DNA of 63,202 nt, counting the filler, from Octopus bimaculoides (taxonomy: Eukaryota), in the NCBI RefSeq assembly GCF_001194135.2. It is 8 parts of 8 records of this genome, joined end to end, with 100 filler letters (N's around TTAATTAATTAA, not from the genome) between each part and the next. Parts side by side here need not be neighbours in the genome. Positions count along the whole stretch, not along the records: positions 59,905 to 63,202 come from NW_026407353.1; 7 more parts are not named here. One strand, written 5' to 3'. A program made the translations under genes and the position numbers. Every line of letters starts with the position of its first letter. Position 1 is the first letter of the stretch. The notes under the pieces were generated by a model. That model had not been told where the DNA came from, made no database searches, and worked only from the letters and a program-made list of their open reading frames with translations. Positions 60,390-60,858 of this stretch are shown piece by piece.

Positions 60390-60858
60390 TATTTATTTAT
60401 TTATTTATGGGTTTCAGCCAAGTGGCTGTGGTCATGCTGGAGCACCACCGTGACTTTCTGTCTTTGTGTTGTGCTCTCTTCACGTTCCTTGCATGGCTCT
60501 TCTCCTCCACCTGATATATTCCAATCAAGAGTTTTGATGGCACATCTGGTGTATAAGAGAATTTGACACAGCTACCCTAAATTGTGTCTCATTTCGAGGC
60601 ATTGGTTAATCTGGTATCACGGAGAGGAAAGCGTCGAGTTTTGTCTTGAAGACCTCTATATCTATGTCTTGCAGGTCTCTCAACTGTTTAGCAGGGCATT
60701 AAATAGCTGAGGTCCTCTGAGACCGAGGCTGTTGCAATACCTTGTTCTTAAGTGAGATGCAGTGGACGGTACCCTTGGTACCATGCAGTGGAGACCTGTG
60801 CGGGCATTCTTGTAGTACTTGATGCCAAAGTTTGGTACCAGTCCTTCCAGTATTTCCC
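60390..60858 (-). mobile_element. CR1-like LINE 3' end with (ATAA)n tail
   Basis: ILEGLVPNFGI...HCMVPRVPS...RYCNSLGLRGPQLFNAL...LDAFLSVIPD; tail CGGTGGTGCTCCAGCATGACCACAGCCACTTGGCTGAAACCC(ATAA)n. Confidence 0.92.

What the first reader, a model, noticed from the sequence alone, without database searches (positions are those of the whole stretch)
60390..60452. SINE family A and CR1-like LINEs share a 3' tail whose hairpin shows a compensatory base-pair change
Seen: the LINE ends GGTGGTGCTCCAGCATGACCA-CAGCCA-CT-TGGCTG-AAAC. SINE A (6741-6778) ends GCGGTGCTCCAGCATGGCCG-CAGTCA-AA-TGACTG-AAAC. The stem changes from a C-G to a T-A pair at the same position while staying paired. A second CR1 copy (58216-58251) has a third variant, GGTACCCCAGGATGGCCA-CAACC-TTT-GGGCTG-AAAC. 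Some SINE copies (28690, 34880) carry CTGTCA, which breaks one pair. Known: stringent LINEs (CR1/L2 clades, e.g. eel UnaL2) recognise a 3' stem-loop that partner SINEs carry. Inferred: this CR1 group mobilised SINE A, with the hairpin as the recognition signal.
Basis: partly seen in the sequence, partly recalled or inferred. Interest (0 to 1): 0.75.

Follow-up and report, generated by a model that had tools for sequence, protein, structure and literature searches.

The report
Octopus SINE borrows CR1-like LINE tail
The 3' end of an old, broken CR1-like LINE copy in an octopus genome carries a 40-base two-hairpin module that an abundant octopus SINE also carries. This is the usual sign that the SINE is copied by the LINE's machinery, so it is a real but ordinary example of a well-known arrangement.

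Summary
On the minus strand, 60449->60411 reads GGTGGTGCTCCAGCATGACCACAGCCACTTGGCTGAAAC, followed by CC and (ATAA)n. It lies about 75 nt downstream of a degenerate LINE ORF2 C-terminus (60901->60543).

Five other LINE copies were fetched, one from the Octopus vulgaris chromosome record OX597818.1. All show ORF2 stop, then a short 3'UTR, then the same module. The tail is therefore real LINE 3'UTR, not an inserted SINE fragment.

Two complete SINE copies and one truncated copy from octopus DNA carry the same module after an unrelated body. A covariance model built from the LINE tails alone finds the SINE tails at 53-61 bits. Control loci that contain the same 14-mer score at most 24.5 bits.

The module folds into two hairpins, not one. 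In the eight-tail alignment, 96% of cells pair and four pairs change on both sides.

LINE and SINE copies both end in about two A-rich 8-9-nt repeats, which matches the hairpin-plus-octamer 3' end described for CR1. The same arrangement, including compensatory changes, is published for oyster CR1/SINE pairs. This is a new member of a known kind. Mobilisation is inferred, not shown.

The parts
60543..60901 (-). Degenerate C-terminal part of LINE ORF2. It has one frameshift near 60690 and one in-frame stop in ..IPD*P... The copy is 5'-truncated at about 60901.
   Evidence: tblastn with P0001/P0003/P0004/P0005: 60901->60692 in frame -1 and 60689->60543 in frame -3, E 1e-23 to 1e-36. Homologues found.
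60450..60542 (-). End of ORF2 (about 5 more codons, then a stop at about 60527-60525) and the variable upstream part of the 3'UTR (about 75 nt). This part cannot be aligned between LINE copies.
   Evidence: Translation. blastn shows that UTR similarity among LINE copies starts only at the module. The alignment agrees.
60430..60449 (-). Hairpin 1: GGU.GUGC / loop UCCA / GCAU.ACC. The upper stem and the loop (NCCA) are invariant in all 8 tails. The lower-stem pair 60447/60432 alternates U-A / U·G / C-G.
60415..60428 (-). The loop varies in sequence and length (3-5 nt). Pairs 4, 5 and 6 change on both sides in other copies.
60409..60414 (-). Single-stranded spacer AAACCC. (G)AAAC is conserved in 6 of 8 tails; the other two read UAAC and AAAU.
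60390..60408 (-). Terminal A-rich tandem repeat (ATAA)4.75, equivalent to ATAAATAA x2.4. This is the 3' end of the element. The other LINE and SINE copies end in about 2 units of an 8-9-nt A-rich motif such as TAAAAGAA.
   Evidence: TRF; 3' ends listed
60928..61177 (+). Endonuclease-domain fragment of a LINE, in the opposite orientation and abutting the 5' truncation point of the LINE above. Whether it belongs to the same LINE family is unknown, so it may not be part of the same element.
   Evidence: Pfam PF14529 Exo_endo_phos_2, E 1.3e-9; ORF 60832-61230

Best explanation
Window 60390-60901 (minus strand) is the 3' end of an old, 5'-truncated copy of a CR1-like, stringent-type LINE in an octopus genome. 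Its last 40 nt of unique sequence form a two-hairpin RNA module. A short spacer and a short A-rich tandem repeat follow.

An abundant octopus SINE carries a copy of this module and the same kind of terminal repeat. That SINE has a tRNA-like/CORE-like head, an internal microsatellite and a body ending ..CTGGGGTCGATTTGCTCGACTAAAGG.

The most likely mechanism is the standard one for stringent LINEs. The LINE's reverse transcriptase binds the 3' module of its own transcript and starts target-primed reverse transcription on the terminal repeat. SINE RNA that carries the same module is copied in trans.

Shown here: the shared module, its continuity with LINE 3'UTR, its selective conservation, base-pair covariation in both hairpins, and the shared terminal repeats.

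Inferred: that the module is the RT recognition site; that hairpin 1 (invariant apex) is read by sequence while hairpin 2 (covarying stem, variable loop) is read by shape; and that this LINE lineage actually mobilised the SINE.
For: - Organism and family. The ORF2 C-terminus matches P0001 and P0003-P0005. P0005 is 'Hypothetical predicted protein [Octopus vulgaris]' on chromosome record OX597818.1.
- Continuity. L001, L092, L093, L094 and L100 each show ORF2 stop, then UTR, then the module. In L094 the module starts 4 nt after the stop.
- SINE side. L092 7331-7763(+) and 11180-10987(-), and L100 1-60(-), carry the module after an unrelated body. SINE/LINE similarity is limited to the last 40-46 nt.
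- Unbiased match. Model R2, built from the 6 LINE tails only, scores the SINE tails at 61.1 and 53.1 bits (E about 1e-22 and 1e-18). 91 control loci preselected to contain the exact 14-mer GGTGCTCCAGCATG score at most 24.5 bits.
- Selective conservation. LINE copies are about 50-75% identical in ORF2 amino acids and their upstream UTR cannot be aligned. The module still keeps 26-37 of 39 bases.
- Structure. 96.2% of cells pair, against 22-50% in slid controls. Four pairs change on both sides. The covariation score is 0.299 against 0.183 in shuffles (0 of 500 reach it). RNAalifold gives the same structure.
- 3' ends. All 8 copies end in about 2 units of an A-rich 8-9-mer, or (ATAA)n in the window. 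This matches the hairpin-plus-octamer 3' structure held to be the CR1 RT recognition site (PMC8665684, PMC4316615).
- Precedent. Oyster CR1-14_CGi shares stem-loop tails, with compensatory mutations, with BivaV-SINE2 and BivaCORE-SINE1 (PMC4824008).
Against: - There is no functional test.
- Only 8 tails were compared. They are individual genomic copies whose post-insertion mutations are not under selection, so some 'kept' wobble pairs (for example the three in the L092 LINE copy) may be decay by C->T or A->G transitions rather than selection.
- Four LINE copies come from host DNA in metagenome/SRA assemblies of unknown species.
- The shuffle control does not correct for relatedness.
- Pair 2 of hairpin 2 is broken in 2 of 8 copies.
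- CR1 clade membership was not tested by RT phylogeny.
- ARAGORN and Rfam did not recognise a tRNA in the SINE head.
- The window's own LINE copy is not the subfamily closest to the SINE tail.
Confidence: 0.8

Rival explanations
1. The tail at 60390-60452 is a SINE fragment that inserted, or was recombined, behind an unrelated LINE remnant. On this reading the sharing is an accident of this locus.
For: The window copy alone cannot exclude it. The region is dense in nested repeats.
Against: Five independent LINE copies from at least four different assemblies show ORF2 stop, then UTR, then the module, with no SINE body (..CTGGGGTCGATTTGCTCGACTAAAGG) in between. The window's upstream sequence is not SINE body either.
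Confidence: 0.02
2. The SINE acquired the LINE tail once, by template switching. The similarity is a historical relic, the hairpins are not recognition elements, and the SINE was in fact mobilised by another LINE such as the RTE elements abundant in octopus.
For: SINE families here swap tails on a shared body block: SINE A and the second SINE at 62615-63010 share CTGGGGTCGAT.T..TCGACT directly upstream of different tails. RTE-BovB is the expanded LINE in octopuses (PMC8967140).
Against: All three SINE copies seen retain the module. Both complete copies also retain the LINE-type terminal repeats at their very 3' end, where reverse transcription must start. The module is conserved among diverged LINE copies while the adjacent UTR is not, and it shows covariation, so it is under selection in the LINE itself.
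Confidence: 0.08
3. Recognition depends on primary sequence (the invariant GGUGC-NCCA-GCAUG box) and/or on the terminal repeat. The second hairpin, which the reader highlighted, would be incidental.
For: The upper stem and loop of hairpin 1 are invariant in all 8 tails, so they give no covariation evidence and could be read as sequence. Pair 2 of hairpin 2 is broken in 2 of 8 copies, and its loop varies in length and sequence.
Against: Hairpin 2 has three pairs that change on both sides with pairing kept, and 93.8% of its cells pair. That is hard to explain unless the stem matters.
Confidence: 0.1

Closest known systems
Oyster CR1-14_CGi LINE with BivaV-SINE2 / BivaCORE-SINE1 (Nishihara et al. 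2016, PMC4824008); also Vhc_1 SINEs with CR1-1_CGi/CR1-14_CGi (Matetovici et al. 2016, PMC4758252)
   Same: These are mollusc CR1-type LINEs and tRNA-derived SINEs, including a CORE-SINE. They share a 3' tail that folds into conserved stem-loops, with compensatory mutations between SINE and LINE, and a partner relationship was inferred from that.
   Different: The host is a different class (Bivalvia versus Cephalopoda). I could not compare the sequences because the figures and Repbase are not available here, so I do not know whether the octopus module is homologous to the oyster one.
Amniote CR1 3' end: hairpin plus 8-bp microsatellite (ATTCTRTG)n, proposed RT recognition site (Suh 2015, cited in PMC8665684 and PMC4316615)
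   Same: The architecture matches: hairpin(s) directly upstream of a short tandem repeat of about 8 nt at the very 3' end, no poly(A), and severe 5' truncation of copies.
   Different: The repeat motif is A-rich (TAAAAGAA-like, or (ATAA)n in the window) rather than ATTCTRTG. Two hairpins are predicted here. Clade membership was not tested by RT phylogeny.
Eel UnaL2 / UnaSINE1 (Kajikawa & Okada 2002; cited from my own knowledge and via PMC3747384)
   Same: It is a stringent-type LINE whose 3' stem-loop plus terminal repeat is needed for retrotransposition and is carried by a partner CORE-SINE. It is the experimental model for the mechanism proposed here.
   Different: UnaL2 belongs to the L2 clade and has a single stem-loop and (TGTAA)n repeats. 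No Rfam family matched the octopus tail at E<=10. Nothing has been tested experimentally for the octopus pair.
Octopus CORE-SINEs OR1/OR2 (Ohshima & Okada 1994) and the 'tRNA-Core' SINEs that dominate octopus repeat content (PMC8967140, PMC4824008, PMC4758252)
   Same: The SINE that carries the module has a Pol III-type head (box-B-like GGTTCCGGGTTCAGTCCC) followed by CACCTTGGGCAAGTGTCTT, which contains the CORE motif CCTTGGG. It is dense in octopus DNA: 5 copies or fragments in 20 kb of L092.
   Different: I could not obtain the OR1/OR2 or Repbase consensus sequences, so identity with a named family is unverified. No LINE partner for octopus SINEs turned up in the literature I could search.

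Membership tests
SINE/LINE pair with a common 3' tail (stringent type; Ohshima-Okada model) | The 3' end of the SINE is homologous to the 3' end of a LINE in the same genome | tested here: met
   L092 (O. vulgaris) holds both a LINE tail (10475-10525) and SINE tails (7703-7753; 11034-10984). They share 30-31 of 39 core bases. The LINE-only model R2 scores the SINE tails at 61 and 53 bits.
SINE/LINE pair with a common 3' tail (stringent type; Ohshima-Okada model) | The shared region is genuine LINE 3'UTR, contiguous with ORF2 | tested here: met
   Five LINE copies show ORF2 stop, then 4-131 nt, then the module. In the window, ORF2 homology ends at 60543 and the module starts at 60449.
SINE/LINE pair with a common 3' tail (stringent type; Ohshima-Okada model) | Homology is confined to the tail, and the SINE has its own small-RNA-derived head with an internal Pol III promoter | tested here: inconclusive
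   Similarity is limited to the last 40-46 nt. The head has box-B-like GGTTCCGGGTTCAGTCCC, seen by eye, but ARAGORN and Rfam find no tRNA in it.
SINE/LINE pair with a common 3' tail (stringent type; Ohshima-Okada model) | A conserved stem-loop in the tail, supported by compensatory changes | tested here: met
   There are two hairpins. 96.2% of cells pair and 4 pairs change on both sides; slid controls give 22-50% paired and at most 2 such pairs. RNAalifold gives the same structure.
SINE/LINE pair with a common 3' tail (stringent type; Ohshima-Okada model) | The LINE mobilises the SINE in trans through the tail | not testable with these tools
   This needs a retrotransposition assay.
CR1-clade LINE | The RT domain groups with CR1 in a phylogeny of non-LTR retrotransposons | not testable with these tools
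   All copies at hand hold only the last 115-232 aa of ORF2 (no RT domain). No named reference RT sequences could be fetched. Pfam finds no family in the C-terminal part.
CR1-clade LINE | The 3' end consists of a hairpin followed by a short microsatellite (typically 8 bp), with no poly(A) | tested here: met
   The hairpins are followed by GAAAC and about 2 units of an A-rich 8-9-mer in 7 copies, and by (ATAA)4.75 in the window. The defining feature is taken from PMC8665684 and PMC4316615.
CR1-clade LINE | Copies are mostly severely 5'-truncated | tested here: met
   The window copy is about 510 bp. In the L092 copy the called ORF (10001-10348) plus UTR and tail span about 530 bp, and neither an RT nor an endonuclease ORF is called upstream of it. 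The sample is small.
UnaL2-type LINE 3' element and other curated RNA families (Rfam 15) | Match to a curated covariance model | tested here: not met
   cmscan of 59905-63202 at E<=10 gave no hit on 60390-60452.
CORE-SINE superfamily | A central CORE domain downstream of the tRNA-like head | tested here: inconclusive
   CACCTTGGGCAAGTGTCTT in L092 12520-12500 and 7412-7432 contains the CORE motif CCTTGGG quoted in PMC5786205. No CORE consensus was available for a formal alignment.

The most novel reading that the evidence does not exclude
This CR1-like lineage could be the autonomous driver, not described in the literature I could search, of the octopus-specific CORE-SINE expansion (SINEs make up about 40% of octopus TE content). 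Its recognition element would be bipartite: a sequence-invariant apical hairpin, then a shape-only second hairpin, then an A-rich octamer repeat. The U·G state in the O. vulgaris LINE copy and the U-A state in the SINE would record stepwise co-evolution of parasite and host element.
Probability: 0.3. Interest if true: 0.45.

Novelty: new member of a known kind. Interest (0 to 1): 0.3.

Why it matters
SINEs are the largest repeat class in octopus genomes, and their expansion is octopus-specific. I found no named LINE partner for them in the searchable literature. Identifying a CR1-like LINE whose 3' module the SINE carries gives a concrete candidate for the engine of that expansion. It also gives a compact 40-nt RNA element with testable stems.

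The principle itself is long established: SINEs borrow the 3' stem-loop of a stringent LINE. It was already shown, with compensatory changes, for mollusc CR1/SINE pairs. The finding therefore adds an example rather than a concept.

Tried and rejected
- Rfam scan of the piece at E<=10: nothing on the tail.
- DNA pattern scans for the tail in JGI metagenome contigs, prokaryote genome contigs and IMG/VR. These gave only chance bacterial matches. I later used those loci as negative controls.
- The search for related loci in viral contigs with the ORF2 C-terminal alignment: none.
- Protein search with an antisense stop-free translation of the SINE, meant to reach more octopus loci: no candidates.
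- Contig look-ups of more distant LINE relatives (P0032, P0027, P0008, P0007, P0009). All have different tails, which helped only to show specificity. P0006 is not on record.
- Simple twin-priming inversion as the explanation for the plus-strand endonuclease fragment that abuts the LINE 3' piece. I rejected this because the endonuclease domain and the C-terminus are far apart in ORF2, whereas twin priming joins adjacent segments.
- Literature search for the tail sequence string: no paper. Albertin 2015 (PMC4795812) is not held.
- tRNA detection in the SINE head: negative.

Full report
**What is at the coordinates.** The feature lies on the minus strand. Reading 60452->60390 gives CACGGTGGTGCTCCAGCATGACCACAGCCACTTGGCTGAAACCC followed by (ATAA)4.75.

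RNAfold folds the 44 nt into two hairpins. Hairpin 1 is GGU.GUGC-UCCA-GCAU.ACC at 60449-60430. Hairpin 2 is CAGCC-ACUU-GGCUG at 60428-60415. The energy is -17.9 kcal/mol, z = -2.86, and 1 of 200 shuffles folds as well. That loop is sterically impossible, so a 5-bp stem with a 4-nt loop is the realistic form.

**Context in the window.** Upstream on the minus strand, 60901->60543 encodes a decayed C-terminal part of a LINE ORF2, with one frameshift near 60690 and one in-frame stop. It matches database proteins P0001 and P0003-P0005 at E 1e-23 to 1e-36. About 75 nt of UTR separate the inferred stop from the module. The copy is 5'-truncated and about 510 bp long.

A LINE endonuclease-domain fragment (PF14529) lies head-to-head against it on the plus strand at 60928-61177. 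Its family is unknown. Simple twin priming does not fit, because the endonuclease domain and the C-terminus are far apart in ORF2.

**Organism.** P0005 is annotated 'Hypothetical predicted protein [Octopus vulgaris]'. It lies on chromosome record OX597818.1 of GCA_951406725.2, and 20 kb around it were fetched as L092. The window shares LINE and SINE families with that locus, so it comes from an octopus genome. I did not determine the species.

**Is the tail real LINE 3'UTR?** Yes. In L001, L092, L093, L094 and L100 the ORF2 C-terminus is followed by the module after 4-131 nt of UTR. These loci are host DNA in ENA/Logan assemblies plus the O. vulgaris chromosome. No SINE body intervenes in any of them.

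At the DNA level the LINE copies align with each other only from the module onward, while their ORF2 parts are about 50-75% identical in amino acids. The module is therefore selectively conserved: 26-37 of 39 core bases match between LINE copies.

- L092 7331-7763(+) is a full SINE. It has a Pol III-type head, CACCTTGGGCAAGTGTCTT (CORE-like), an internal TA/TG microsatellite and a body ending CTGGGGTCGATTTGCTCGACTAAAGG. The tail then reads CGGTGCTCCAGCATGGCTGCTGTCACATGACTGAAAC AAGTAAAAGAGTAA.
- L092 11180-10987(-) is a second copy.
- L100 1-60(-) is a third copy, cut by the contig end.

SINE/LINE similarity is limited to the last 40-46 nt. A covariance model built from the six LINE tails alone (R2) finds the two complete SINE tails at 61.1 and 53.1 bits and the truncated one at 20.2 bits. 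Ninety-one bacterial control loci, preselected to contain the exact 14-mer GGTGCTCCAGCATG, reach at most 24.5 bits. L092 holds five copies or fragments of this SINE in 20 kb. That density agrees with SINEs ('tRNA-Core', 'tRNA-Deu') being the main octopus repeat class (PMC8967140).

**Covariation.** I used the 8-tail alignment (A1) with the two-hairpin structure. 96.2% of cells form standard pairs, against 22-50% when the 3' partners are slid by 1-3 columns. Four of 13 pairs change on both sides. The covariation score is 0.299 against a shuffled mean of 0.183, and 0 of 500 shuffles reach it. RNAalifold predicts the same two hairpins without being told.

- Hairpin 2, pair 4 is C-G in five LINE copies, U·G in the O. 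vulgaris LINE copy, and U-A in both SINE copies.
- Hairpin 2, pairs 5 and 6 are U-A and C-G in L100, against C-G and A-U elsewhere.
- Hairpin 1, lower-stem pair (60447/60432 in the window) is U-A in three LINE copies, U·G in L093, and C-G in L094, L100 and both SINE copies.
- The upper stem and loop of hairpin 1 (GUGC-NCCA-GCAU) never vary, and the loop of hairpin 2 varies freely.

That last pattern suggests, as an inference, that hairpin 1 is read by sequence and hairpin 2 by shape.

There are caveats. These are individual copies, and post-insertion decay adds noise. Transitions that create wobble pairs can mimic conservation. The sample is small, and the shuffle control ignores relatedness.

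**3' termini.** After GAAAC, all copies end in about two units of an A-rich 8-9-mer: TTAAAAGA-ATAAAAGA, GTAAAAGAA-GGAAAAGAA, AATTAAAG-AATTAAAA, and in the SINEs AGTAAAAG-AGTAA and AATAAAAG-AATAA. The window has (ATAA)n. A hairpin plus an 8-bp microsatellite is the 3' structure described for CR1 and proposed as its RT recognition site (PMC8665684, PMC4316615).

**Specificity.** LINE relatives at 40-50% identity in the same C-terminal domain (L097, L101, L102, L103) lack this module; they score below 8 bits with model R1 and give no match at E<=1 with R2. L101 and L102 do show a different hairpin followed by A-rich repeats, so the architecture looks general in this group while the sequence is family-specific.

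**Which LINE subfamily?** The SINE tail (GGCGGUGC...AUGGCC) is closest to the L094 type of LINE tail (33/39). The window's copy (GGUGGUGC...AUGACC) matches at 31/39 and 28/39. The window LINE is a relative of the likely source rather than the source itself.

**Comparison with what is known.** SINE/LINE pairs that share 3' tails are widespread, and the CR1 and RTE clades predominate (PMC3747384). In bivalves, CR1-14_CGi shares stem-loop tails, with compensatory mutations, with BivaV-SINE2 and BivaCORE-SINE1 (PMC4824008). Vhc_1 SINEs share tails with CR1-1_CGi (PMC4758252). The experimental paradigm is eel UnaL2/UnaSINE1 (my own knowledge; cited in PMC3747384).

I found no description of an octopus SINE/LINE partner in the searchable literature. 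Repbase could not be consulted. The verdict is a correct observation and a sound interpretation of an ordinary kind: a new member of a known class.

**Mechanism.** The steps that are shown and the steps that are inferred are set out under Best explanation.

Noticed in passing
window 62615-62815 and 62818-63010 (+): Two tandem, diverged (about 78-90%) copies of a second SINE family. It shares a roughly 25-nt block (CTGGGGTCGAT.T..TCGACT) with the tail-sharing SINE, directly upstream of a completely different tail (..CCCCTCTCTGTATAGCCCCTTGTGGGCAGTAAAGAAA). This looks like tail swapping on a common body. From memory, the body resembles the Deu domain.
   Followed up: partly
window 60928-61177 (+), ORF 60832-61230: An isolated LINE endonuclease-domain fragment (PF14529). 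It abuts, in the opposite orientation, the 5' truncation point of the LINE 3' fragment. Its family and the origin of the junction are unknown.
   Followed up: partly
window 60156-60244: A 17-nt tandem repeat, AAATTTATATAGAGGGA, 5.2 copies at 97% identity, about 150 bp beyond the LINE's 3' end.
   Followed up: no
L092 7281-7330 and 7764-7813: The full SINE copy (7331-7763) sits exactly between two 50-nt arms that are 90% complementary. It therefore inserted at the centre of a palindrome or foldback element. A possible 6-nt target duplication is AATGTA.
   Followed up: partly
L092 7725-7730: This SINE copy has CTGTCA in the 5' arm of hairpin 2, which breaks pair 2. The L100 LINE tail also has pair 2 mismatched (A·C).
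   Followed up: no
L101 about 940-990; L102 about 505-570: More distant LINE relatives end in a different 6-7-bp hairpin (TTTTCCC..GGGAAAA; TAACAG-TTG-CTGTTA) followed by A-rich repeats ((GTAA)n; (AAATAG)n). The architecture is the same but the sequence differs.
   Followed up: partly
L001 640-707: The ENA metagenome contig that carries the closest intact LINE tail also holds the tail of the second SINE family in reverse orientation. It is therefore octopus host DNA inside a metagenome assembly. Likewise, P0006, a close homologue, is labelled 'Escherichia coli' in NCBI, which is probably contamination.
   Followed up: no
L094 733-740: In this LINE subfamily the ORF2 stop codon lies only 4 nt upstream of the module, so the two-hairpin module and the terminal repeat make up essentially the whole 3'UTR.
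   Followed up: no
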